IMG/VR virus record: IMGVR_UViG_3300043446_004437
Coordinates: 62,001-126,000 of that record
Strand: one strand, 5' to 3'
DNA: 64,000 nt
This document shows positions 19 through 35,266 of the stretch, piece by piece; the stretch's first letter is position 1, and each line of letters begins with the position of its first letter. Under the pieces are notes generated by a model. It did not search any database, was not told the DNA's origin, and saw nothing but the letters and a program-made list of their open reading frames with translations. Both the position numbers and the translations under genes were made by a program.

Positions 19-441
19 GTGAAGTTCGACAGCCCCGCCGGCTTCACCCCGGGTGTCATCTACACCTTGTGGATGGACCCGAAGGCTGACGCTCAGGTGA
101 TCGCCGGTGCAACGGCTTTCATCGACGGGACCGCCAAGACCCGCGACGGTCAGGACTACCACCGTGCTTGCCGGCTCGCTGTGGCCAACGACATCTCGGA
201 CTTCGAGATGACCGCCATCAAGACCGACAAGTACACCTCGTTCGGTGTGGAGCGGACCTCGCAGAAGGCATCCATCTTCCTGAAGGAAGGTGCCATCGCA
301 CGCTGGGAGATCGGTGAATTGACGATCAGCCCGGAGACCGGCGACTTCGACGACCTCGACTTGTTCGTCGACACCAAGGGGATGGCTCTCTTGAGCGCAC
401 CCGCAGCCCCATCCATCGTGACCGAAGAAGACCCCTTCTAG
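19..441 (+). CDS. hypothetical protein with acidic C-terminal EEDPF tail
   Basis: 140-aa ORF, GTG start, C-ending codon bias, followed by a hairpin and T-run. Confidence 0.75.
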   Translation: MKFDSPAGFTPGVIYTLWMDPKADAQVIAGATAFIDGTAKTRDGQDYHRACRLAVANDISDFEMTAIKTDKYTSFGVERTSQKASIFLKEGAIARWEIGELTISPETGDFDDLDLFVDTKGMALLSAPAAPSIVTEEDPF

Positions 442-3300: not shown

Positions 3301-4341
3301 ATGTCATTACTCGAAAAGTTCGGATACAAGAAGGACGAGTTCGCAATCGCTTTGGAGAACCCAGAGTTGTTTGCTTCCAACTCAACCACCACCAAGATCG
3401 TAGTTGGTAAGCCAACTCGGATTCCTGGTTCAATCAACGGAGTTGCGGTTCCAACCACAATTCTCGTCAAGAAGGCACAGTGGAGCCGCCTCACGGTTCG
3501 TGACCACATCGTTCGCCGCGCAGACGCAGAAGCACGCGTTTCGCAGGTGTTTGGTGGTGTGTTCAACAACCTTCAGGCAGACGTCACCCTCGAAATCGAC
3601 GGCACCGAAATGTCGTTGTACGATCTCATGAAGCAGTTCTGCATCGAATCGTACGGCAAGTCGTTGACCGACGACAAGATCGACCAGATGTTGAGCACCA
3701 ACTTGTCATTAAACGGCATCCGCAATGGTGGACCGCTCATGTTCCAGCAGATGGGTGCTAGCGTTGCTGGCATTGCACACGCTGTGGACGCATTCAAGTC
3801 GGCTGGTGCATTCGATGACATTCGTTCGGTTGGATCCAGCAAGTCCTTCACCACAGCATACAAGATGCCTGATGGTAGCGGACTTGACGTGGTTTCCTTC
3901 GAGCTTGGTACCTCGGATCGTAACCTGTCCAAGACTGGTCAGGGCTTCATTGACATCGTCAGTGCAGTGACCGAGAACTTCGAGCGTGTCAAGAACCACA
4001 AGTCTGTGGCCAAGGTGCTGCAGGACAAGTTGGACGCTGGCATTGGTTCGATGAGTCAGGAAGACATCAAGAAGGCACAAGGGGAAATCAAGATTGAGCT
4101 TGACATGGCCAAGGACTACGCAAACTGCTGGTCTGGTGCTGCTCGTCAAACCAAGATTGACAACGGTCGCAAGATTGTTGAGAACAAGTACAACGCATCC
4201 AACGCACCATGTGGTCGCTGGTCTGCCGTTGTAAACGGTACGGTTGTGGACTTCGATGTCTGGTCAAACTCGACCAAGAGCGCAGTCAACACCACAGAAC
4301 AGGAACTGAGCAGCATCGCAACTGCTGTCGACCCGTTCTGA
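3301..4341 (+). CDS. hypothetical protein with C-terminal DPF tail
   Basis: 346 aa, strong C-ending codon bias, AAGGA RBS. Confidence 0.9.
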   Translation: MSLLEKFGYKKDEFAIALENPELFASNSTTTKIVVGKPTRIPGSINGVAVPTTILVKKAQWSRLTVRDHIVRRADAEARVSQVFGGVFNNLQADVTLEIDGTEMSLYDLMKQFCIESYGKSLTDDKIDQMLSTNLSLNGIRNGGPLMFQQMGASVAGIAHAVDAFKSAGAFDDIRSVGSSKSFTTAYKMPDGSGLDVVSFELGTSDRNLSKTGQGFIDIVSAVTENFERVKNHKSVAKVLQDKLDAGIGSMSQEDIKKAQGEIKIELDMAKDYANCWSGAARQTKIDNGRKIVENKYNASNAPCGRWSAVVNGTVVDFDVWSNSTKSAVNTTEQELSSIATAVDPF

Positions 4342-19079: not shown

Positions 19080-19152
19080 GCGCCTTTAGCTCAGCCGGTA
19101 GAGCACCGGACTTTTAATCCGTTGGTCCTGGGTTCGACCCCCAGAGGGCGCA
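19080..19152 (+). tRNA. trnK: tRNA-Lys(TTT)
   Basis: GCGCCTT/AGGGCGC acceptor, loop CTTTTAA. Confidence 0.95.
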
Positions 19153-19219
19153 CTGGATATAAGAAATAAAAACATACAGTGATATGTATTTCTAGTCCAA
19201 TTTTTAACAAAGGAAAAAA

Positions 19220-25538: not shown

Positions 25539-26302
25539 TTGCACCTTTTGTATTTTTAGGTTTAGCTGCAAAGCTAATCAACAACAAAATAAATAAACAA
25601 AAACAAAATAATGAACTTTCGTTATTCAATAATATAATTTCCACATACACAAACAAAGTAGAGAAAGAGACAGATACTAGTGACACCGACAGAAAAAGAA
25701 TACGAAGATTCAATAAAACTAACATCTGAATCAATTAAATCATACTTAGATGATTGTTGTTTAGATGTTCAATTTAGCCCAAACGGAACATTATCTGCAA
25801 CCGAAACATATCTTATAAAATTAATTTCTAAAATTGCTATAGGTTCAGCTACCGTTTGGTGGTCACTTATTGAATTGAAACAATTCATAAAAAATCGTAA
25901 ATCCATTTAGGAGAAACAATGAGCTCAGAAGATTACAAAAAATTAGATAAAATAAAAAAGTTTAACTTTTCTTTTGACATGGCATCTAAAACTAAGTCTG
26001 AGCTTCAACAACAACGCGATACAGTAAAGGAAAGAATAGATAAGATCGTCAATCATTTTACAATCGATGACGTTCCTATTCTTTCCTACATACTGCATGT
26101 AACATCTTCTCGCGTAGAATTAAAAAAGCTTGCTAAAGCTATTGATAGGTTAGCTGATCTTGTAGAAATAAATACTTCTTTAAATAATAAACTTAAAGTT
26201 ATTGAAGCTGCGGAAACAGATCCAAATTGGTTTGCTCTTGCATTTGGTGATTTTGATCAAGAAATAGATTCAGATTTAGAAAAATTTTTTACCCAAGAAT
26301 AG
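25526..26302 (+). CDS. three small ORFs (25526-25729, 25680-25910, 25919-26302)
   Basis: ORF track, operon packing. Confidence 0.6.
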
Positions 26303-26320
26303 TTGAAGAAAGAGATTATC

Positions 26321-27973
26321 ATGGATAAAGTTTCATATTCTTTTGTTAAAGATCAAGACAATATTATCTTTAGATCAAAAGTAAAGTCATTTAATTTAGA
26401 CCATGTTACAGATAAAGATATTGCTTCGTTTTACACCGCATTTTCTGACTATTCTTATTTTGATACTGGTCTTTTGCCTTTAGATGGCACCGGTCTTTTA
26501 GGTGTACGCAAAGCCGGCAACCACACTCAAGTCATATATCAGTACAAACCAGGCATGTATTATGTTAACTGGGGTGCTTACGAGAAAGACTCAAATTACA
26601 CAAAATACTATTTTGCTCAACCATACAGAATTGTTATCATAGATTTTCTTGATAACAATCTTTTAGGTGCAAGAACATTTTATGCTGTCGAGCCAGCAAT
26701 ACATTCAAATGTTCAGCTGTATCATGTTAATCTACCAAACATCAATTGCCAAGGGTACCGCGGAAATGCTGTTGGTTGGATATGTTTATATCACAATGAA
26801 GATTGGTCTAAGTTACCTTTTAACGAAAGACTCAATAGAGCATTAGAGCGTTGTTCTGGCGTAGAAGTTTACAATGACGCCAACATGAGCGAAACAGATG
26901 GTCCTCGTTTTTATGAACAATCTGAAATGCCTGATTACACTTATAGCCCAACTTTATGGGAGAACAAATCAGCAGAAGAGGGTTGGGAATGGACATTAGA
27001 TCCATCTCATTGGATACCTGTTAAAGTAAGATCAATTGATTCCCAAACCGATCATTATGCAAACGGCATTCCTCTTACCCTTCTTACGGCAATAACTGGC
27101 AATTACAAAGCGTACTACACTGACACTTATTTGCCAAAACCAATTAACGCTATTACCAGACCTGATTTACAATTACCTAATTCTCAAGTTGTAAACTGGT
27201 TTGTGCAGTCTTACAATACTTCTTCAACAACATTTTCTGGTCTTGATCCTTATTCTCAAAGCCAAGCTCATAGAGAACATGCTGCAACTATACAGCAAAC
27301 TTTATTTGATAACGATGATGAAGAAGAAGACGAAGATTCAGAAAATGAATCAGATGAATTATACTGCCCAGTTGTTCATGAATTTGTTTCTTCTGATTCT
27401 TGTGGCGATAAAAGTTCAACCTATCAAGATGAAGAAGGAAACTGTTACGAAGTTTGTCAATCTTGCGTTTATCACAACGATTTGATTTATGCAAAAAATA
27501 CTATGAAGCTACATAGCTCTTCGGAAAATTTGCATTATCAAGAATGTGAAGAAGAATATTATTATCTTCCAGCTATTAATTCTCCGTACAAAATTTGTCC
27601 AAATTGTGACACTTTACACATATCATTGCTTAAAGATGCTGCAATATTTCCTATTTGGAAATACACCAACCAACCAGGCGATCATGCTTGCTCAACTTGT
27701 ATAGCATCTCATCCAGACAAATATACACAATGTTCAGAATGTTCAACTGATGTTCCTCACAATACTTCTAAATTCTTTAATGATACTTTACATTATGATG
27801 AAGATTATGAAAAAGTTACTTGCGAATCTTGTTTGAAATTAGCTGATAACACTATTCAAACAGAGTTTACTCAAAAAAATTTAGTTCCTCCTTCTGAATT
27901 AATTATAACGGCTATACAAGATTTAGTGAATAAAATTAATTCTACTCCAAACACTGCTGAAGAACCATTTTAA
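26321..27973 (+). CDS. prokaryotic E2 family D-like protein with acidic linker and Cys-rich C-terminus
   Basis: QPY.IV...LYHVNLPN.....G.ICL pattern as in PRTRC protein B / Prok-E2_D. Confidence 0.6.
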   Translation: MDKVSYSFVKDQDNIIFRSKVKSFNLDHVTDKDIASFYTAFSDYSYFDTGLLPLDGTGLLGVRKAGNHTQVIYQYKPGMYYVNWGAYEKDSNYTKYYFAQPYRIVIIDFLDNNLLGARTFYAVEPAIHSNVQLYHVNLPNINCQGYRGNAVGWICLYHNEDWSKLPFNERLNRALERCSGVEVYNDANMSETDGPRFYEQSEMPDYTYSPTLWENKSAEEGWEWTLDPSHWIPVKVRSIDSQTDHYANGIPLTLLTAITGNYKAYYTDTYLPKPINAITRPDLQLPNSQVVNWFVQSYNTSSTTFSGLDPYSQSQAHREHAATIQQTLFDNDDEEEDEDSENESDELYCPVVHEFVSSDSCGDKSSTYQDEEGNCYEVCQSCVYHNDLIYAKNTMKLHSSSENLHYQECEEEYYYLPAINSPYKICPNCDTLHISLLKDAAIFPIWKYTNQPGDHACSTCIASHPDKYTQCSECSTDVPHNTSKFFNDTLHYDEDYEKVTCESCLKLADNTIQTEFTQKNLVPPSELIITAIQDLVNKINSTPNTAEEPF

Positions 27974-28013
27974 TTAAAAATAACGGAATATTATTTTATT
28001 TAGGAGACCACCT

Positions 28014-29744
28014 ATGCAAGAAGAAGAAGTGCAGCCTCAAGTAACCCTTGATCAGCTTCAATATTTTTGGATGCCGTCAGGCGTTCCATGTTTTATTGCT
28101 GACAGGGATACAATTTGTGATATTGTTGAAGACATTGGCTTTAACATATATTATCTTTTGGCCAACAAAAAGACAGTGAAAACAATTCAGCAGCCTGCAA
28201 ATAACAACAAAGTTGGTTACACCACCACAACCCAGCCTGTGCAGGTTGCTACTTACAATTCTTCATTATTTAAGGTTGTGAATAATTTTGTTGGTAGGGT
28301 AATTAAACCATCTGATGATGAATTGCCAGCAGAGTTTTATGTTGCAGAAGAGTGTTGTGAATACAACATGCCTGAATTGCCTTACGTTCTTGTTGAAAAG
28401 ATGGATCAATTCTTTAGACTTGTTTATTCTCAGCACGGCACGGAGTCAATTGTTCTTCTTACTTACGATACAGAAAAACAGGGATCTGATGGTTGGGGTG
28501 TTTTAGTTCCTGATCAGGTAAATACTCCTGCTCACTGCAAATACGATGCGGACAGCATCGCTGCAATCAAACCAGAAAATGTTATGATTGTTGGTTCTGT
28601 TCATAGTCATCCAGAAATGTCTGCGTATGCTTCTGGTACCGACCACGCAGATCAAGCAGATTTTGATGGTCTTCACATCACCTATGGTTGGCAGAAGAGC
28701 GTCAACAATGGCGCCACTCAGTACCACATAGAACTTCAGATGTCTGGATCTTCTTATACCTTGAAACCTGAAGATGTTTTTGAGAATTTTTATATTCAAA
28801 AAGAACCTGATTCTGAAGTTGTAGAATGGTCTACTAAAGTAAAAAAAGCACACCCCCCTATAGCGGGGGGAGTCAGCACGTCGGCACCAGCGCAGGTTCC
28901 AGCGCCGTACAACCAGTCTCATCGGGCTCAACAACCGTATCAAAACTCGACGCAACATACGGCGGCTGGGGAGCCTACGATTGGTAAAAGACTTTTAACC
29001 AAACACTGGAACGACATGGTTGCCGATCTTGGTGACAATGCCATTGTTATTGTTGAAGCAGACCCCCAAATAGCTTATGCTTCAATATGTCCTGCTTGCG
29101 ATTACGATCTTGATACTCAAGATTTTAGAGCAGGATATTGTGCTTGTTGCGATGTTCCAGTTGTGTTAAACAGTCATAGTATTTTTCAAATAGCTTCGAT
29201 ATACAACAGATATTGTCTTGAGAGATCTTTAGATCCAACTCAAATGGTTCCATATTTGTATGGTGAAAACGAAAAGTTTGAACACTTTTTGATGAAACTA
29301 AATATTGAACAAGAAATACACGATATACACAAATATAATTATGGCATAGATGACGATGAAGATGTTCCATTAAGTTTAATAGAATCTTCTGATAATTATG
29401 ATTATTATCACAGTCTAAACGATAATGATTATGATGGAACAAAAACCATATGTTGCAATACACCTATGGAAAATTACATTAATAACTGTAATTGTCTTGT
29501 TCCAATTCTTTATGAAGATTTAAGTGCATTTGAATCGGCAGTTGAAACTATTGAGCTTTATGACACTAATTCTTCTTGTATATATTGCGCTCATTATTAT
29601 ACTCCTGCATGTCCTGCATATCGTTATTTATTAACTCAATATGTTACAAATAAATACGGTTTTGATCTTGAAACCCAAAGAAACGGCATAATACCGTGCA
29701 CTCATTATGAGTCAATGTATGCAGATACATTAGAAAAGGAATAA
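28014..29744 (+). CDS. JAB/MPN+ metallo-isopeptidase with Cys-rich C-terminal extension
   Basis: TESIVLL Glu and HSHPEMSAYASGTD (HxH-x7-S-x2-D). Confidence 0.9.
   Translation: MQEEEVQPQVTLDQLQYFWMPSGVPCFIADRDTICDIVEDIGFNIYYLLANKKTVKTIQQPANNNKVGYTTTTQPVQVATYNSSLFKVVNNFVGRVIKPSDDELPAEFYVAEECCEYNMPELPYVLVEKMDQFFRLVYSQHGTESIVLLTYDTEKQGSDGWGVLVPDQVNTPAHCKYDADSIAAIKPENVMIVGSVHSHPEMSAYASGTDHADQADFDGLHITYGWQKSVNNGATQYHIELQMSGSSYTLKPEDVFENFYIQKEPDSEVVEWSTKVKKAHPPIAGGVSTSAPAQVPAPYNQSHRAQQPYQNSTQHTAAGEPTIGKRLLTKHWNDMVADLGDNAIVIVEADPQIAYASICPACDYDLDTQDFRAGYCACCDVPVVLNSHSIFQIASIYNRYCLERSLDPTQMVPYLYGENEKFEHFLMKLNIEQEIHDIHKYNYGIDDDEDVPLSLIESSDNYDYYHSLNDNDYDGTKTICCNTPMENYINNCNCLVPILYEDLSAFESAVETIELYDTNSSCIYCAHYYTPACPAYRYLLTQYVTNKYGFDLETQRNGIIPCTHYESMYADTLEKE
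28841..28870 (+). promoter_or_regulatory. putative -1 programmed ribosomal frameshift signal
   Basis: A AAA AAA heptamer in frame, 5-nt spacer, CCCCCC-TATAGC-GGGGGG hairpin. Confidence 0.75.
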
Positions 29745-29746
29745 TT

Positions 29747-30505
29747 ATGAACCCTAAACGTTTTGTTGTTATAGGAGCTGGTGGCGTAGGCACATGGCTT
29801 ATTTCAGGTTTAGTAAGATTGCTTGAATGGAAAGCTCCAGGTTCAGGTTTGATAATTGTTGACGGCGACAATTATGAACAAAAGAACAAAGAGCGTCAAG
29901 AGTTTACAAAAATTGGCAATAAAGCTGTTGTTAAAGCTCATGAACTTACACCTAGTTTTCCAAAAACAACTATTATTCCTGTACCCAAATGGGTTGTAGG
30001 AGACGACTTTAAAGGAGTTACGACAGATGAAGATTCTCCAAAAATTAAAGCATCAGCTTTATTATCTGAAGGAGATGTGGTCTTTGCGGTTGTCGATAAT
30101 TTTGCTGCGCGCAAGATTATTTTTGATGCGGCGTCGCGGTTAGACAACATTGATGTATTTACTGGTGGCAACGACGATGCTTTATTTGGTTCAATATATC
30201 ATTATCAAAAAAGAGATGGCGTTGCTATAACAGAACATCCAGCAGTGTTTCACCCCGAATATGATAACGCACCAGACAAAAATCCTGGTGAATTATCATG
30301 TCAAGAAAGATCTGAAATAGAAGGTGGAACACAGTTACTTGCCACTAATATGGCAGTTGCTGCATTTATTCTTGGTAGAGTACAAAAGACAATTGTGCTA
30401 GACCAAAGCCCCGAAGAAACAGAGATATATTTTGATTTAGGTATCGGTAAATCCGAACCATATAACAGAATGGTATCTTATGTTTCAGAACCTGTTCAAG
30501 TATAA
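29747..30505 (+). CDS. ThiF/E1-like activating enzyme
   Basis: IGAGGVG, VDGD..E.KN..RQ, NKA, VDNFAAR, candidate catalytic Cys in ELSCQER. Confidence 0.92.
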   Translation: MNPKRFVVIGAGGVGTWLISGLVRLLEWKAPGSGLIIVDGDNYEQKNKERQEFTKIGNKAVVKAHELTPSFPKTTIIPVPKWVVGDDFKGVTTDEDSPKIKASALLSEGDVVFAVVDNFAARKIIFDAASRLDNIDVFTGGNDDALFGSIYHYQKRDGVAITEHPAVFHPEYDNAPDKNPGELSCQERSEIEGGTQLLATNMAVAAFILGRVQKTIVLDQSPEETEIYFDLGIGKSEPYNRMVSYVSEPVQV

Positions 30506-30523
30506 ATAAAATAAGGAGCAATC

Positions 30524-30775
30524 ATGGAAAACAATATGTCAAACGCTTCCGCATCTCAGCCAACTGGTATGGCAAATTTGAGGTTTGGTGTTTACAACCA
30601 GCCTACAAATGTTGCTGGAAAATCTGTTCAGCAAGCGCGCGAACAGTTTTCTAAAATTTGGGGTATCCCAAATGACGCAGTTGCTTACAAGGGCAAGGAC
30701 AAGCTCGACGAGAATTACGTTATTCAGCCAGGTGACAACGTAGAATTCCACCGTCGTGCCGGCGAGAAGGGCTGA
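30524..30775 (+). CDS. ubiquitin-like (beta-grasp) protein ending RRAGEKG
   Basis: 83 aa, C-terminal Gly, VIQPGDNVEF strand, directly after E1, strong RBS and C-ending codons. Confidence 0.8.
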   Translation: MENNMSNASASQPTGMANLRFGVYNQPTNVAGKSVQQAREQFSKIWGIPNDAVAYKGKDKLDENYVIQPGDNVEFHRRAGEKG

Positions 30776-30794
30776 TTAATTCAGTCATAAGATC

Positions 30795-30840
30795 GTGGGA
30801 AGGCTCTAATTTCCGCTAATAGAGCCTTCCCACATTTTTT
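30795..30840 (+). terminator. Rho-independent terminator
   Basis: 14-bp stem gtgggaaggctcta/tagagccttcccac followed by a T-run. Confidence 0.85.
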
Positions 30841-30874
30841 TTAAAAGGCGTAAGTCTATCTATCAGGGGAAAAA

Positions 30875-32479
30875 ATGTTATTTGATGAAATAAAACTTGG
30901 TTATCCATCTTTATGGCTTAAAACCACAGAATATTCAAGAGCCGCAGAAAGTTTAGTTTCTTATGATTTTAGAGACTTTTATACAATAAATTTTGAGTCT
31001 GGCTTTTCTCAGTATGTTGGTGGTGCATGGAAAACAATTCTTATAGAATCTATAAATCCAGAAAATGGAGAAACAATCCATCAATCTACATTTGATCCTT
31101 CTGTATCGTTAAATTATTTACTTAATCTTAAATCAGATAAGCCAGTTACTTATTTGCTACCAATTTTAGGCAAACCTGATTCTGTTCTTCTTCCATACAT
31201 TTCTTTTGTTGCTGCTTTAAATGATAATTACAGAAAGAACTTTTGGCTTGATAATATTGAAGCAACATCGCTTCAAGTAGTATTTATATCTTCTGCCGAT
31301 GCTCCAGAAGAATATTTGCATATGTTTAAAACTGTTCAGTTTTCTTATCCTAATTCAGAAGAACTTTTTACAGTAGTTAATCATATCGATACTTCTTCTG
31401 CTGGAAGATTTGTTGATCAAAATGAAATCAAAGATATTGTTCGTTCTGGCTTAGGTCTTACAGAAGATCGTTTTGTTGATCTTTGTTTACGTTCTATTGT
31501 CAACAACAATAAGATTGATAGCAAATATGTTTATGATCAAAAGATGGCTCATATTAAAGAAGCTGGTATTTTGGAGATTATTAAACCTAAAATATCTTTT
31601 GATAATATTGGTGGCTTAGATAATATTAAAGATATTATTCAAAGAACAAAACTATTGTGGGCTAACCGGGAACAAGCAAAATCTTTTGGCGTTGTTCCGA
31701 TTAGAAGAGTTCTTATGGTGGGCGTTCCCGGCACCGGCAAGTCTGCTATTTGTCAAGCAACTGCGAAAGAACTTGGCCTTGACTTGGCCCGTACTGGCAT
31801 TAGCCAAGTTATGAACTCTTTTGTCGGCAAATCAGAAGCAAACATGAGAGCTGTTTTTGATCAGATTAAAATGATGACTCCGCTTTGTGTTTGGATCGAC
31901 GAGTTTGGTCGCGATCTTTCAGGTGGCTCTAGCAGTTCTCATGTTGACGCAGGCACTACTGATCGTGTTCACGGTGAATTTTTGACAGGATTGCAGGAAC
32001 TTCCAGAAGATACTTTCCTTATGTGTGCCGCAAACCAGCTAGATAATCTTCGTCCAGAAATGCTTCGTGCAGATCGTTTCGACAAGATAGTCTTTGTTGG
32101 TTTGCCTTCACATCAAGAAAGAAAAGATATCTTTAAAATTATTCTTAAAGATATTGAAACTGATCACATCTTTGATTACGATGCACTTGCGGAAAAAGCA
32201 CAGTACTTTACTGGCGCAGAAATTACCGCACTAATCAAAGAAGTTAAATTCTTTGTTGTTTCTTCACAACTTCGACCAATCAATACTCAAGATATTATAT
32301 CTTATATTCCTACTGTAAGAAATATTCTCTGGAACAAAAACAGAGATATGATTAAAAACATGTATCAGTATGCTCTTGAACAATGGGATTGGGCTTCTAC
32401 TGAACAGCTACAAGATGCTAAAATGATTATACACGGTACGAGAAGCAACTCTGATAAAGACTTAGCTTGGAAAATATAA
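30875..32479 (+). CDS. classical-clade AAA+ ATPase (Ycf46-like, degenerate N-terminal module)
   Basis: GVPGTGKS, WIDE, AANQLDNLRPEMLRADRFD second region of homology. Confidence 0.92.
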   Translation: MLFDEIKLGYPSLWLKTTEYSRAAESLVSYDFRDFYTINFESGFSQYVGGAWKTILIESINPENGETIHQSTFDPSVSLNYLLNLKSDKPVTYLLPILGKPDSVLLPYISFVAALNDNYRKNFWLDNIEATSLQVVFISSADAPEEYLHMFKTVQFSYPNSEELFTVVNHIDTSSAGRFVDQNEIKDIVRSGLGLTEDRFVDLCLRSIVNNNKIDSKYVYDQKMAHIKEAGILEIIKPKISFDNIGGLDNIKDIIQRTKLLWANREQAKSFGVVPIRRVLMVGVPGTGKSAICQATAKELGLDLARTGISQVMNSFVGKSEANMRAVFDQIKMMTPLCVWIDEFGRDLSGGSSSSHVDAGTTDRVHGEFLTGLQELPEDTFLMCAANQLDNLRPEMLRADRFDKIVFVGLPSHQERKDIFKIILKDIETDHIFDYDALAEKAQYFTGAEITALIKEVKFFVVSSQLRPINTQDIISYIPTVRNILWNKNRDMIKNMYQYALEQWDWASTEQLQDAKMIIHGTRSNSDKDLAWKI

Positions 32480-32487
32480 GGATAAAT

Positions 32488-35266
32488 ATGTCAGATCAAA
32501 TTGATTTTTCTAACATTGAAGAAGTATTAGAAAGCATACAAGTAGATAAAGATGTTCCCAACAACCATTCTTTATCTGCAAATAAACAGTATGATCAGGA
32601 CCTTTATAAAAAATGGTTTCGTTCTAAAACACAAAGCGGATTTCTTTCTATCAAACCATGGTATCAAGGTTTGAAATTTAAGATTGATATTGGTAAAACA
32701 TCTCCAGATGGAAAGCTTTTAGGAAGCACTATGGTGTTTGTCGACGCCATAGATTTTGCAGCATATTTAGATTCTGTTGTTAACGGTACAGCAAAACTTA
32801 ATTTTCCCGCCAATGAAAAAAATGGTAGCGTTACAGATGAATCTTTTGTTTCCTATGGCGGTGGCATCATAGAATCAAAACCAATATCAAGAATATTTAA
32901 ATCTCACTATTGGCAGAACTCTGACAAATCTTATGATTCTAATGCATTCGTTTGGAAATGCGGACATTTTGCTGCACGTAAAACAGAAAGCGGAGCTTTT
33001 ATTCCAAACATGTCTTCACCTGTATCTGTAGACTCAATTAAAGTTACAAGACAGGATCTTGTAAGCATTTCTTATATGCTAAAATTGTCACTAACATCTC
33101 ACGTGACAAACAATCCTGATTGGTATAACATATAATTATGACTGATAACTACACTGAAGCTAACATTGAAATAATGACTAAGATTCTTTCTTCTTTAGTT
33201 GAAGAAGTATATCAAAAAATATTAACTGATATCGAGTCTCAGTTTAAAGATATACTTGCAAAATTAGAAAAATATGAAGATCAAGTTGCGACAATAGTGT
33301 ATGCTTATGGAGAGCAAGCTATAGTTATGGAAGCGTTAACTTCCCAACTTGAGTATGCTACTCCAGAAGCTCAAAAAGCTTTTACTGATAGTTTATCAGA
33401 GCAACGAAAGAAAATGATACAGGTTCTCAATGAAAGCTCTAAAGGATTTATGGCCGACAACGATCCAGGAATTGCAAGAGCCCTTGGCAACCTGGTTGAA
33501 AAAAAGTTATCTGACACAAATTAATAACAATGAATGCGTGTTATTTGTAGATAAACATAATTATTTACTTTTACAAAATATTGTTTATCTTTCACAGATA
33601 TATCCTCTTGTTAAATCATTATGTCCTGAATTTAAATCTTTACATTTATTAGAAACAAATCTTTTAACTTATTTAAGACAATCAAAAATAGAATTGTATT
33701 CTGTAGAGGTAGTATAATGCTTATAACTAATTTTAATGATATTTCTTCTTTTAACCATTTTTGGAATGATGGCATTGATAGACTGCACAACTGCAGGCCA
33801 CTTACAGAAGAACTGTATGTTTTATTATCTTTTAATCGGTTAGATATAGTCAAAGCTCATGTAGAGTCCGGAGCATCAGTATCTAACTATGTTGAACAAA
33901 TTCAACAAAATCTTCCTGAACAATATCAAACTATCGTTTCGGAATACCATACAAAATTTAAATCCGAACACACTGCGTACGTTTATCCTTACAGTTCAAC
34001 AAAATTCTTTAACAGTATGTTTAAAGAAATTTTACCCTCCGCTGCAAAAAAACTTTACTCATTAATTTTTAATGATTCTTCTTTTATACAAATGTATGAT
34101 TCAACTGCAACATCTTTCAAAGGATGTATCTTATTTAAGATTGTTCCTACTTTAAAGAACTTAAAAGAAATAAATAATATAGTTTTTAACACAGTTTCAT
34201 CTGATTCTGTCGCAGTTCTTCAAGATGTATTATCTCATATACAGCTAATAGTAGAAGACAATGAAGCTTACAAAAATTATATCTTAGAACTTGAATCTGC
34301 TGTAATTAATCTAAACAGTAAAATAGATCTTCTTCAAAAAGAAGGCATGAACGGTTATCTTCTTAGCTGGCATTAATGTGAAAAGGAAATATATATATGT
34401 ATAAAATAAAAACTTCATTAAGCGGCTCATCATATGCTGCTATCCCTGTTGATTCAGTCAACAGTATGAATTTATTTGTAAATCAATACAGTAAAATTCC
34501 TTTAAATAAAGTTGTTTACGATTACTTTAATACAGGTCAAGTATATGTAAACTTCCCATCTAGCTCAGGTAAGATTCTTGGTTTTTCTGATACTATGTGC
34601 ACCATACTCGTCAGGTATGTTGTCAAGCCTTCTTTCTTTAACCAGTTTGATGATAATCATACTTTTGAAGTTCCTAGTTGGGCTACTAGGTTCGTTGATG
34701 ATCAGTTAAATGGCTGGATGCTTGATATTGGTTTAGTCTTTGAAATTGACAGTTCACCTGCTGCAAATCCAATCTGTAAACATTATACTGGTTACACTTC
34801 TGAAAACAATTATGTAACTTCTAAAAATTATTTGTTTGCCAACAAACCTAATTCTATTAGATCTAATTGTTCAAATTCAAAAGTTTATGTGAATAAACTT
34901 ACTCCACATTCATGCATATACAGTGATACAAAAACTCCTTTTGTTAGCTGTCCTTTTTATGAATATGATTATGAAGTAGTTGAAAGTTTTCAAATACACA
35001 AAAACACGCATTCTCCACAAGAATTTGAACTAAGATATATTCCTTGTTCAGATAGCTTTGCAATATATCATTTTTATGATATTACAAATAAACAAATTAA
35101 TTATTCTATCTTTGAAAAAGATACACCAGAATTAAAAGATACTGTTATGTTGGCTGTAAATGAAATCATTTCATCTTACTCTAACTATGAAGTTAAACAA
35201 ATTCAAAATCAAGGCGTTTCTGTCAGTGCGCCAGAAAAGAAAAGCTACATACTTTCTTTAGTCTGA
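32488..35266 (+). CDS. five hypothetical ORFs (32488-33135, 33138-33524, about 33538-33717, 33717-34376, 34397-35266)
   Basis: Contiguous ORFs without recognisable motifs. Confidence 0.7.

What the first reader, a model, noticed from the sequence alone, without database searches (positions are those of the whole stretch)
28841..28987. Programmed -1 frameshift inside the JAB gene giving long and short isoforms
Seen: GTA AAA AAA G (A AAA AAA at 28841-28847) lies right after the JAB domain, followed by a 5-nt spacer and a C6-TATAGC-G6 hairpin. The -1 frame stays open for 46 codons (STPPYSGGSQHVGTSAGSSAVQPVSSGSTTVSKLDATYGGWGAYDW, stop 28985-28987). This stretch is visibly more GC-rich than the flanking gene, as expected for dual coding. 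Established: heptamer plus 3' hairpin is the dnaX/IS3-type signal. Inference: a 576-aa JAB with a Cys-rich domain and a 324-aa JAB with an aromatic YGGWGAYDW tail.
Basis: partly seen in the sequence, partly recalled or inferred. Interest (0 to 1): 0.75.

Follow-up and report, generated by a model that had tools for sequence, protein, structure and literature searches.

The report
Conserved -1 frameshift in phage JAMM gene
A large group of uncultured ~200-kb phages carries a deubiquitinase-like (JAMM/JAB) gene with a strictly conserved ribosome-slipping signal, so one gene most likely makes a 576-aa enzyme with a zinc-binding tail domain and a 324-aa enzyme with a short Gly/Ser/Tyr-rich tail.

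Summary
ORF 28014-29744 encodes a JAMM/JAB protease. It has an in-phase A_AAA_AAA at 28841-28847, a 5-nt spacer, a C6/G6 hairpin at 28853-28870, and a 46-codon -1 ORF ending at TAA 28985-28987.

I fetched 132 related loci (38-99% protein identity). 129 carry the same in-phase A7, always with A at the wobble of the preceding codon, even where Val became Ser. All 37 lineage representatives have a hairpin, mostly 4-6 nt downstream. All have a -1 ORF of 26-48 codons ending in a Y-x-x-W-(Y/G)-x motif. The overlap is GC-rich in 107 of 107 unique loci.

Substitutions in the overlap peak at 0-frame codon position 2, which is the -1 wobble, so both frames are under purifying selection. In 24 of 37 lineages the -1 ORF has no start codon, so it can only be entered by frameshift.

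The overlap lies in a disordered linker between the JAMM domain and a Cys-rich C-terminal domain. A sister ~420-aa family carries a similar Gly/Ser/Tyr-rich segment in frame 0 and has no slip signal in the six loci checked.

This is a new, well-conserved case of canonical -1 programmed frameshifting. No product has been detected directly.

The parts
28014..29744 (+). JAMM/JAB gene, frame-0 product of 576 aa (long isoform)
   Evidence: ORF list. Pfam Prok-JAB match at residues 141-226. 474 homologs, nearly all 550-620 aa. JAMM motif E144 and H197-x-H199-x7-S207-x2-D210 is invariant. Foldseek matches Rpn11-homolog 6fnn, PfJAMM1 5ld9 and the bacterial Ubl-deubiquitinase 8tyx.
28014..28847 (+). 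Part shared by both isoforms: N-terminal extension plus JAMM domain (residues 1-278)
   Evidence: AF2 model pLDDT mostly 75-88 over residues 1-278. This is the most conserved part of the protein, with mean 66% identity among 37 lineage representatives.
28841..28847 (+). Slippery heptamer A_AAA_AAA in the X_XXY_YYZ phase (GT[A AAA AAA]G)
   Evidence: Identical in 129 of 132 loci. The preceding codon is GTA (Val) or, in one clade, TCA (Ser). Elsewhere in these genes GTA is 22.7% of Val codons, TCA 18.9% of Ser and AAA 67.6% of Lys.
28848..28852 (+). Spacer (GCACA, 5 nt) between heptamer and stem
   Evidence: The spacer is 4-6 nt in 32 of 37 lineage representatives.
28853..28870 (+). Stimulatory hairpin: C6, loop TATAGC, G6
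   Evidence: A hairpin of 5-13 bp (mean 7.7) with dG -8.7 to -20.5 is present in 37 of 37 lineages. Inner pairs and loops differ between clades. CCC is only 10% of Pro codons and GGG only 5% of Gly codons elsewhere in these genes.
28847..28987 (+). -1 frame extension: 46 codons plus TAA, the Gly/Ser/Tyr-rich tail of the 324-aa short isoform
   Evidence: Open for 26-48 codons in all loci. A Trp lies in the last 8 residues in 37 of 37 lineages. Substitutions peak at the -1 wobble position. There is no start codon in 24 of 37 lineages.
28848..28991 (+). Frame-0 linker (about residues 279-326, Thr/Gln/Ala/Pro-rich), overlapped by the -1 ORF
   Evidence: AF2 pLDDT is about 30 over residues 280-326. 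These columns are highly variable in alignment A1. GC is 0.57 here against 0.36 in the rest of the gene, in 107 of 107 unique loci.
28992..29741 (+). Cys-rich C-terminal domain, found only in the long isoform (zinc-ribbon-like CPxC...CxxC plus further invariant Cys)
   Evidence: Invariant C359, C362, C376, C379, C480, C481, C492, C494, C522, C525, C533 and C562. Folded segments 327-432 and 474-561 in the model. No Pfam family and no informative Atlas match.
29747..30505 (+). E1-like (ThiF family) gene, immediately downstream
   Evidence: Pfam ThiF, E 2.8e-11. Syntenic in 37 of 37 lineages.
30524..30775 (+). 83-aa putative ubiquitin-like protein ending in ...RRAGEKG
   Evidence: The C-terminus EFHRRAGEKG is conserved in 32 of 34 lineages. 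Syntenic in 34 of 37. The Ubl fold itself was not tested.
30875..32479 (+). Cdc48/VCP-like AAA+ ATPase
   Evidence: Pfam AAA plus lid. phmmer against PDB gives Cdc48 at 1e-53. Syntenic in 31 of 37 lineages.

Best explanation
The gene at 28014-29744 uses canonical programmed -1 ribosomal frameshifting. Most ribosomes read straight through and make a 576-aa protein: a JAMM/JAB metalloprotease domain, a disordered linker and a Cys-rich (zinc-ribbon-containing) C-terminal domain. A fraction of ribosomes pause with tRNA-Lys in the P and A sites on AAA AAA, held up by the GC-only hairpin 5 nt downstream. They slip one base back on A_AAA_AAA and continue in the -1 frame for 46 codons. This gives a 324-aa protein with the same JAMM domain followed by a Gly/Ser/Tyr-rich, probably disordered tail. 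That tail ends in a conserved Y-x-x-W-(Y/G)-x C-terminal motif. Shown here by comparison: the signal and both reading frames are under selection across a deep, monophyletic phage clade. Inferred: the slip is ribosomal, the two products are made in a fixed ratio, and they divide the work of the neighbouring Ubl / E1 / Cdc48-like AAA module. One possibility is that one form is tethered through its Cys-rich domain while the other is free or docked through its C-terminal aromatic motif.
For: (1) Signal anatomy in the window: in-phase heptamer, 5-nt spacer, 6-bp GC hairpin and a 46-codon -1 ORF.
(2) The heptamer is identical in 129 of 132 loci with 38-99% protein identity. The preceding codon always ends in A (GTA, or TCA where Val became Ser), although GTA and TCA are only 23% and 19% of their codon families elsewhere in these genes. 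Val codons a few positions upstream vary freely among the same sequences.
(3) A hairpin is present in 37 of 37 lineage representatives, with a 4-6 nt spacer in 32. It uses rare CCC and GGG codons. The inner stem pairs (CG, GC, UA, AU) and the loops differ between clades while pairing is kept. Only 0.14% of other 36-nt windows in the same genes fold as well.
(4) The -1 ORF is 26-48 codons long (sd 5) in all loci, while elsewhere in these genes the -1 frame stays open for a median of only 4-5 codons. The +1 control ranges from 0 to 75 codons (sd 20).
(5) The -1 peptide has a conserved character (S 19%, G 14%, Y 12%, T 10%). A Trp lies in its last 8 residues in 37 of 37 lineages, against 0 of 37 in frame 0 and 4 of 37 in frame +1. 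A Tyr lies three residues before that Trp in 65 of 95 unique tails.
(6) Phase of substitutions in 20 disjoint close pairs. Upstream, codon positions 1/2/3 have 101/35/727 changes. In the overlap they have 42/105/80 (chi-square 26.6, p = 1.7e-6). The peak is at the -1 wobble position and the minimum is at the site that is non-synonymous in both frames. 72 changes are silent only in -1, and 66 only in frame 0.
(7) The -1 ORF has no ATG, GTG or TTG in 24 of 37 lineages, and a stop closes it 3 codons upstream of the slip site in 24 of 37. It therefore cannot be an independently initiated gene.
(8) The overlap coincides with a disordered frame-0 linker (pLDDT about 30).
(9) A sister ~420-aa family has a Gly/Ser/Tyr/Thr-rich segment in frame 0 at the same place. 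The six loci checked have no heptamer or hairpin. The clade carrying the signal is monophyletic (SH-aLRT 100).
(10) A_AAA_AAA plus a stem-loop is a proven -1 frameshift signal in an IS cluster (PMC4066793).
Against: No direct evidence of the product exists: no proteomics, ribosome profiling or reporter data, and the host and translation system are unknown. Pairwise identity of the -1 peptides (31-38%) is only marginally above that of the frame-0 linker (30-35%) and the +1 control (27-31%). The case for selection therefore rests on composition, the end motif and substitution phase rather than on alignable sequence. The GC-richness of the segment also lengthens the +1 frame (mean 31 codons), so open-frame length alone is weaker evidence than it looks. 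No conserved upstream Shine-Dalgarno-like stimulator was found (16 of 37). An A7 run could also support some RNA-polymerase slippage. AF2 gives no structure for the tail, so its function is unknown.
Confidence: 0.85

Rival explanations
1. Transcriptional slippage: RNA polymerase stutters on the A7 run and adds one A to a fraction of mRNAs. Standard translation of those mRNAs then gives the same 324-aa product.
For: The run is a homopolymer, and AAAAAAA is under-represented in E. coli genes in all frames, possibly for this reason (PMC4066793). All the evidence for selection on the -1 frame is equally compatible with this route.
Against: From established knowledge, efficient bacterial slippage generally needs runs of 9 or more A or T; here the run is exactly 7 in 129 loci and never longer. 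A conserved hairpin 4-6 nt downstream of the run is the hallmark of ribosomal stimulation and has no known role in polymerase stuttering. The strict codon phase of the run matters for ribosomes, not for polymerase.
Confidence: 0.07
2. DNA-level phase variation: the A7, C-run and G-run homopolymers are mutational hot spots that switch individual phage genomes between long-only and short-only versions of the gene.
For: One assembly (L186, protein P0123, 324 aa) is about 95% identical to L082 but has C5 instead of C7. That puts the tail in frame 0, with the C-terminal domain ORF intact downstream. P0121 looks like another indel at the C-run.
Against: Only about 2 such variants were seen among some 130 loci and roughly 570 protein clusters, and homopolymer sequencing or assembly errors explain them equally well. 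The A-run length never varies. The C and G runs differ between lineages but always keep frame 0 open. The model does not explain the conserved pairing of the two runs or the fixed spacing from the heptamer.
Confidence: 0.03
3. The -1 frame is not translated. The A-run and hairpin are conserved for another reason: a protein-level VKK...PP..GG motif, an RNA stability or processing element, or a translational pause site for co-translational folding. The -1 ORF is then a by-product of a GC-rich linker.
For: VKK closes the last strand of the JAMM domain, and KK is also nearly invariant in the sister family that lacks the signal. GC-rich sequence keeps all frames open for longer (the +1 mean is 31 codons). 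The region is not an intrinsic terminator (no T-run) and matches no Rfam family, so these results neither help nor exclude other RNA roles.
Against: A protein motif does not fix wobble bases, and the A is kept where Val became Ser. Frame-0 residues over the stem vary between clades (PPIAGG, PLPTKAGV, PPLQSQAGV, APALGA) while the pairing is kept. The excess of substitutions at frame-0 position 2, the Trp-containing end motif placed just before the stop in 37 of 37 lineages, and the narrow length range of the -1 ORF are not expected for an untranslated frame.
Confidence: 0.04

Closest known systems
E. coli dnaX (tau/gamma) -1 frameshift
   Same: A lysine-codon heptamer (A_AAA_AAG there, A_AAA_AAA here), a stem-loop about 6 nt downstream, and a shortened second product that shares the N-terminal catalytic part and lacks C-terminal interaction domains.
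   Different: In dnaX the -1 frame stops after one codon; here it adds 26-48 residues with a conserved end motif. dnaX also has an upstream Shine-Dalgarno-like stimulator, which is not conserved here. The gene families are unrelated. There is no Rfam match.
IS3 / IS911-type transposase frameshift signals (A_AAA_AAG or A_AAA_AAA plus a downstream structure)
   Same: The same heptamer class and a stem-loop stimulator. An A_AAA_AAA cluster with a stem-loop is listed as a proven case (PMC4066793).
   Different: In IS elements the frameshift fuses two ORFs to make the longer, active product. Here the frameshift product is the shorter one and frame 0 gives the longer one.
Phage tail assembly chaperone G/GT-type frameshift (lambda and most long-tailed phages)
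   Same: A conserved -1 frameshift in a phage gene gives two proteins with a common N-terminus, presumably in a fixed ratio.
   Different: The gene family and function differ, the usual heptamer differs (G_GGA_AAG in lambda, from memory), and there the shifted product is the longer one. The module here is not a recognisable tail module: PHROGs gave no matches for the large neighbouring ORFs tested, though the module genes themselves were not scanned.
JAMM/MPN+ isopeptidases (Rpn11, AMSH, archaeal JAMM1, bacterial Ubl-deubiquitinases of Bil/Bub-type operons)
   Same: The catalytic motif and fold, and the genomic association with an E1-like enzyme and a small protein ending in Gly. The pairing with a Cdc48-like AAA ATPase recalls the Rpn11/AAA and Cdc48 partnerships.
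   Different: This is a phage-encoded protein with a roughly 115-aa N-terminal extension and a unique Cys-rich C-terminal domain. No E2 was recognised. There are no PADLOC defence-system matches beyond weak E1 hits. None of the named relatives is known to me to be recoded.
Lambda/T1 tail assembly proteins K (JAB + NlpC/P60) and I (Ubl)
   Same: A phage-encoded JAB next to a ubiquitin-like protein with a C-terminal Gly (PMC1779556).
   Different: There is no NlpC/P60 domain here and no tail-tip context. An E1 and an AAA ATPase are present. No similarity to any record of the phage collection was detected.

Membership tests
Canonical -1 programmed ribosomal frameshift signal (heptamer plus 3' structure) | X_XXY_YYZ slippery heptamer in the correct phase of the upstream frame | tested here: met
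   GT[A AAA AAA]G at 28841-28847. In phase in 129 of 132 related loci.
Canonical -1 programmed ribosomal frameshift signal (heptamer plus 3' structure) | Stable RNA structure starting about 5-9 nt after the heptamer | tested here: met
   C6/G6 hairpin after a 5-nt spacer. In 37 of 37 lineages: spacer 4-6 nt in 32, mean 7.7 bp, mean dG -14 kcal/mol.
Canonical -1 programmed ribosomal frameshift signal (heptamer plus 3' structure) | Conservation of the signal at synonymous sites across diverged homologs | tested here: met
   GTA or TCA, then AAA AAA, is invariant although those codons are 23%, 19% and 68% of their families elsewhere in the same genes. Neighbouring codons vary at their wobble positions.
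Canonical -1 programmed ribosomal frameshift signal (heptamer plus 3' structure) | -1 ORF that is open, conserved and under purifying selection | tested here: met
   26-48 codons in all loci. Trp-containing end motif in 37 of 37 lineages. Substitution counts 42/105/80 at frame-0 positions 1/2/3, p = 1.7e-6.
Canonical -1 programmed ribosomal frameshift signal (heptamer plus 3' structure) | Trans-frame protein detected, and dependent on the heptamer and the structure | not testable with these tools
   Needs a reporter assay, western blot or mass spectrometry.
dnaX / IS911-type signal with a 5' stimulator | Shine-Dalgarno-like element about 10-14 nt upstream of the heptamer | tested here: not met
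   An SD-like 4-mer lies between -24 and -7 in only 16 of 37 lineages and is not conserved in position. This element is an enhancer and is not required for -1 frameshifting in general.
Described RNA families (Rfam 15) | Match to a curated frameshift-element or other covariance model | tested here: not met
   Only chance-level hits (E of 3.4 or more) in 28600-29200.
Programmed transcriptional slippage | Long homopolymer run (typically 9 or more A/T in bacteria; from established knowledge) | tested here: not met
   The run is exactly 7 in 129 loci. One distant locus (L048) has A8, read in phase as A_AAA_AAG.
JAMM/MPN+ metalloprotease | Glu ... H-x-H-x7-S-x2-D zinc and catalytic motif | tested here: met
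   E144, H197, H199, S207 and D210 are invariant in 35 sequences. The profile aligns to Rpn11-like chains over the motif.
JAMM/MPN+ metalloprotease | MPN fold | tested here: met
   Foldseek matches 6fnn_B (E 7e-6, TM by target 0.60) and 5ld9 (TM by target 0.67-0.70), with probability 1.00.
JAMM/MPN+ metalloprotease | Isopeptidase or peptidase activity on a Ubl | not testable with these tools
   Needs a biochemical assay with the neighbouring 83-aa protein.
Bacterial Ubl-conjugation operons (Bil, Bub, CBASS Cap2/Cap3) | E1, E2, Ubl (or target C-terminus) and JAB encoded together, with matches to the systems' profiles | tested here: inconclusive
   E1 (ThiF), JAB and a small Gly-terminated protein are adjacent. 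No E2 was recognised, and PADLOC gives only weak E1-E2 hits (E 7e-4) for the E1. The element is phage-borne.

The most novel reading that the evidence does not exclude
The frameshift sets a fixed ratio of two forms of an Rpn11-like isopeptidase inside a phage-encoded ubiquitin-like toolkit (Ubl, E1, JAMM, Cdc48-like unfoldase). The long form would be anchored or targeted by its zinc-binding domain. The short form would carry a low-complexity Gly/Ser/Tyr tail whose terminal hydrophobic-aromatic-X motif docks it onto a ring-shaped partner (the AAA ATPase, or a host protease or ATPase), in the manner of HbYX-type tails. On this reading an ancestral in-frame Gly/Ser/Tyr linker became an alternative, frameshift-accessed C-terminus when the larger C-terminal domain evolved.
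Probability: 0.15. Interest if true: 0.8.

Novelty: new member of a known kind. Interest (0 to 1): 0.6.

Why it matters
The mechanism is textbook, but the case is unusually clean and appears to be undescribed. My literature searches found no report of recoding in a JAB/JAMM gene. The signal is invariant across a deep clade of uncultured ~200-kb freshwater and marine phages. These phages have no similarity to sequenced phage isolates at this gene.

Automatic annotation will call only the 576-aa product, so a conserved phage protein is missed everywhere. The case also gives a natural example of how dual coding is accommodated: the overlap is confined to a disordered linker, GC content rises by 20 points, and substitutions shift to the alternative wobble position.

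Finally, it flags a conserved phage module (Ubl, E1, JAMM, Cdc48-like AAA) whose biology is unknown. For that module, having two forms of the isopeptidase is evidently essential. This offers an entry point for studying ubiquitin-like signalling used by phages rather than against them.

Tried and rejected
- DNA and protein searches of the phage isolate collection with the gene found nothing.
- MAFFT/RNAalifold on 48-nt windows gave no structure, because the loops differ in length and the 3' arms were not aligned. I replaced this with per-sequence hairpin enumeration.
- Pairwise identity of the -1 peptides against the frame-0 linker was not discriminating, because both are low-complexity. The end motif and substitution-phase tests were decisive instead.
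- AF2 of a natural in-frame short form (P0123, with an N-terminal-domain alignment) left the tail unstructured, with pLDDT below 50. This gave no insight into docking.
- Atlas and Pfam searches of the Cys-rich C-terminal domain gave only generic zinc-ribbon hints. It is not related to the upstream 556-aa Cys-rich protein.
- I tested whether Trp-containing C-termini are a general feature of this phage's proteins. They occur in 12 of 84 ORFs against about 8 expected, which is not significant.
- A conserved upstream SD-like stimulator was not found.
- Host inference from genome bins returned only MAG contigs of mixed taxonomy, probably mis-binned phage DNA.
- PHROGs annotated only a helicase and a protease among ten large ORFs.
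- The sister 420-aa family was checked for the signal in only six loci. Its 'no frameshift' label in the tree is extrapolated to the other members.
Full report
OBSERVATION. The ORF at 28014-29744 (+, 576 aa) reads GTA AAA AAA GCA across 28839-28850. The seven A's at 28841-28847 therefore sit in the X_XXY_YYZ phase required for tandem -1 slippage. A 5-nt spacer (GCACA) follows, then C6 (28853-28858), the loop TATAGC and G6 (28865-28870), which RNAfold pairs. From AGC at 28847 the -1 frame is open for 46 codons to TAA at 28985-28987. GC content rises to 0.58-0.63 in 28850-28984, against about 0.3 on either side.

WHAT THE GENE IS. Pfam gives a weak Prok-JAB match. In an alignment of 35 homologs the JAMM motif is invariant: E144 and H197-x-H199-x7-S207-x2-D210. 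A profile search of the PDB aligns this motif to Rpn11-like and AMSH proteases. An AlphaFold model matches the Caldiarchaeum Rpn11 homolog, Pyrococcus JAMM1 and a bacterial Ubl-deubiquitinase. The model has a confident N-terminal part (residues 1-278) and a disordered segment at 280-326 (pLDDT about 30). It then has a C-terminal domain (327-432 and 474-561) with twelve invariant cysteines, including a CPxC...CxxC zinc-ribbon-like unit. The -1 ORF overlaps the disordered linker and nothing else.

THE GENE'S SURROUNDINGS. The gene sits in a module that is syntenic in all 37 lineages examined. The order is: a 127-aa protein, a 556-aa Cys-rich protein, the JAMM gene, a ThiF-type E1 and an 83-aa protein with an almost invariant C-terminus ...EFHRRAGEKG. 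A Cdc48/VCP-like AAA ATPase (1e-53 to Cdc48) and a 222-aa protein follow. None of these matches a known defence-system profile beyond weak E1 hits. The window belongs to a 216-kb IMG/VR viral contig. The gene has no relative in the collection of sequenced phage isolates.

IS THE SIGNAL CONSERVED? The large protein database holds 474 homologs, nearly all 550-620 aa, so the frame-0 fusion is the standard architecture. I fetched 132 related loci from viral and metagenomic contigs, with 38-99% protein identity.
- The in-phase A7 is present in 129 of them, representing 107 unique sequences.
- The codon that supplies the first A is GTA in every lineage with Val. It is TCA in the one clade where the residue is Ser, so the amino acid changed and the wobble A did not.
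- Elsewhere in the same genes GTA is 22.7% of Val codons, TCA 18.9% of Ser and AAA 67.6% of Lys. Val, Glu and Ser codons a few positions upstream vary freely at their wobble positions in the same sequences.
- The base after the heptamer is G in all but one lineage.

THE HAIRPIN. In 37 representatives (less than 80% identity over the 203 residues before the site) a hairpin begins 4-6 nt after the heptamer in 32 cases, and 2, 3 or 7 nt after it in the rest. It has 5-13 pairs (mean 7.7) and dG from -8.7 to -20.5 kcal/mol. The outer five pairs are C-G. They are built from CCC and GGG codons that make up only 10% and 5% of Pro and Gly codons elsewhere. The sixth and deeper pairs are CG, GC, UA or AU in different clades, and loops range from 3 to 8 nt. 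The structure is thus maintained while the sequence and the encoded frame-0 residues change. Only 0.14% of other 36-nt windows in these genes fold as well, and in 29 of 37 genes none does. The segment has no T-run, so it is not an intrinsic terminator. It matches no Rfam family.

IS THE -1 FRAME TRANSLATED? Five lines of evidence say yes.
1. Length. The -1 ORF is 26-48 codons in every locus (mean 38, sd 5), while elsewhere in the same genes the -1 frame stays open for a median of only 4-5 codons. The +1 frame over the same GC-rich stretch ranges from 0 to 75 codons (sd 20).
2. Content. The -1 peptides are rich in Ser (19%), Gly (14%), Tyr (12%) and Thr (10%). All 37 lineages have a Trp in the last eight residues, against 0 of 37 for frame 0 and 4 of 37 for +1 over the same nucleotides. 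Among 95 unique tails, Tyr lies three residues before the last Trp in 65, Ser or Gly fill the two positions between, and Tyr or Gly follows. The Trp is one or two residues from the end in 67. The consensus is Y-[SGN]-[SG]-W-[YG]-x-COOH.
3. Substitution phase. In 20 disjoint pairs of close relatives, the upstream JAMM domain has 101/35/727 changes at codon positions 1/2/3. The overlap has 42/105/80 (chi-square against uniform 26.6, p = 1.7e-6). The most variable site is frame-0 position 2, which is the wobble of the -1 frame. The least variable is the site that is non-synonymous in both frames. 72 changes are silent only in -1, 66 only in frame 0, and 50 in neither. This is the signature of two overlapping frames that are both under purifying selection.
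4. Access. In 24 of 37 lineages the -1 ORF contains no ATG, GTG or TTG at all, and in 24 of 37 a -1-frame stop lies three codons upstream of the slip site. The frame can only be entered from frame 0.
5. Ancestry. A sister family of about 420 aa (JAMM, linker, small zinc-ribbon domain) has a Gly/Ser/Tyr/Thr-rich segment in frame 0 right after the equivalent V-x-K-K. The six loci examined have no heptamer-hairpin cassette. On a tree of the JAMM domain the signal-bearing sequences form one clade (SH-aLRT 100) beside that family. The Gly/Ser/Tyr peptide therefore looks like an old feature of these proteins that is reached by frameshift in the 570-aa family.

MECHANISM. The best-supported reading is canonical -1 ribosomal frameshifting. 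The two tRNA-Lys slip from AAA AAA to A AAA AA while the ribosome is held by the GC stem, and 46 codons are then read in the -1 frame. A_AAA_AAA with a downstream stem-loop is a proven bacterial signal in an IS cluster (PMC4066793). Polymerase slippage on A7 would give the same protein and cannot be excluded computationally. However, the run is never longer than 7, its codon phase is fixed, and a conserved 3' hairpin at ribosomal spacing has no known role in stuttering.

DNA-level phase variation is suggested by one assembly, L186 (protein P0123, 324 aa). Its C-run is two bases shorter, which puts the tail in frame 0. It is rare, though, and may be a homopolymer error. A purely protein-level or RNA-stability explanation does not account for the wobble conservation, the substitution phase or the terminal motif. 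I put the ribosomal frameshift at 0.85.

WHAT THE TWO FORMS DO. This is inference only. Both forms share an apparently active JAMM domain. Only the long one has the Cys-rich domain, and only the short one has the Gly/Ser/Tyr tail with its aromatic end. The tail is predicted to be unstructured. About 44% of unique tails end in hydrophobic-aromatic-X, which from memory resembles the HbYX docking tails of proteasomal and Cdc48 ATPase systems. This is a lead, not a test. The neighbouring Ubl, E1 and Cdc48-like ATPase suggest that the enzyme processes or removes the 83-aa modifier. The phage also encodes its own tRNA-Lys(UUU) (19080-19153), the tRNA that would slip. That fits an AT-rich phage supplementing host tRNAs and may or may not bear on efficiency.

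COMPARISON AND NOVELTY. As a mechanism this is a member of the heptamer-plus-stem-loop class (dnaX, IS3/IS911, phage G/GT). It met every sequence-level criterion I could test, except the optional upstream SD-like enhancer. As a gene it is a JAMM/MPN+ protease by motif and fold. It is not a demonstrable member of the Bil, Bub or CBASS operon families. I found no report of recoding in a JAB/JAMM gene, and the phages concerned are uncultured. I therefore class it as a new member of a known kind, with interest 0.6. It is a robust, annotatable recoding event and an entry point into an unexplored phage ubiquitin-like module, but not a new principle.

LIMITS. There is no direct evidence for the product. 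The host is unknown, since genome-bin hits are MAG contigs of mixed taxonomy. The lineage representatives are phylogenetically related, so probabilities computed as if they were independent overstate significance. The within-sequence controls (neighbouring codons, other frames, other windows) do not suffer from this. The absence of the signal in the 420-aa family rests on six loci. One of them (L048) has an in-phase A_AAA_AAG with a 23-codon -1 ORF ending in an aromatic tail, which I could not evaluate further.

Noticed in passing
window 25919-33135; loci L001-L132: A seven-gene module is syntenic in all 37 lineages: a 127-aa protein, a 556-aa Cys-rich protein, JAMM, a ThiF-type E1, an 83-aa protein ending ...EFHRRAGEKG, a Cdc48/VCP-like AAA ATPase and a 222-aa protein. 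It looks like a phage-encoded ubiquitin-like toolkit with no recognised E2 and no PADLOC match.
   Followed up: partly
window 19080-19153 (also 7076, 16019, 18838, 21999, 23540, 43772): There are seven tRNA genes, including tRNA-Lys(UUU), the tRNA that decodes the slippery AAA AAA. The others are Arg-UCU, Leu-UAA, Asn-GUU, Met, Thr-UGU and Gly-UCC.
   Followed up: no
window 19-441, 3301-4341, 26303-27973: Three ORFs end in an acidic-Pro-Phe tip (...EEDPF...AVDPF...AEEPF). From memory this resembles the C-terminal tip of bacterial SSB, so it may be a shared docking motif.
   Followed up: no
L186:3363-3530 (Logan ERR14822410) versus L082: A near-identical relative has a C5 run instead of C7 in the 5' arm of the hairpin. 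The short isoform is then encoded in frame 0 (P0123, 324 aa), while the C-terminal domain ORF stays intact downstream. This is either a natural variant or a homopolymer error.
   Followed up: partly
proteins P0135-P0217; loci L133, L134, L135, L136, L150, L179: A sister family of about 420 aa has a JAMM domain, an in-frame Gly/Ser/Tyr/Thr-rich linker and a small zinc-ribbon domain. It is found on contigs up to 240 kb and has no conserved slip signal. L048/L135 has an in-phase A_AAA_AAG and a 23-codon -1 ORF ending WEYYGYI.
   Followed up: partly
L009 and L025 (both IMGVR_UViG_3300042868_009074, 267.8 kb): One viral contig carries two divergent copies of the whole JAMM locus (46% and 41% identity to the window protein), each with its own frameshift cassette. 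This could be a chimeric assembly or a phage with two modules.
   Followed up: no
alignment A1, last columns (P0011, P0014-P0018, P0065, P0100, P0118): Several full-length homologs end in W-[ED]-[NSD]-Y-[GA]-x (or WDDYE). This aromatic C-terminal tip on the long isoform resembles the end of the -1 tail. The window's own long form lacks it.
   Followed up: no
window 30875-34376: Three downstream proteins end with Trp-containing tips (...DLAWKI...PDWYNI...LLSWH). Window-wide, however, 12 of 84 ORFs have a Trp in the last 7 residues against about 8 expected, so this is probably chance.
   Followed up: yes
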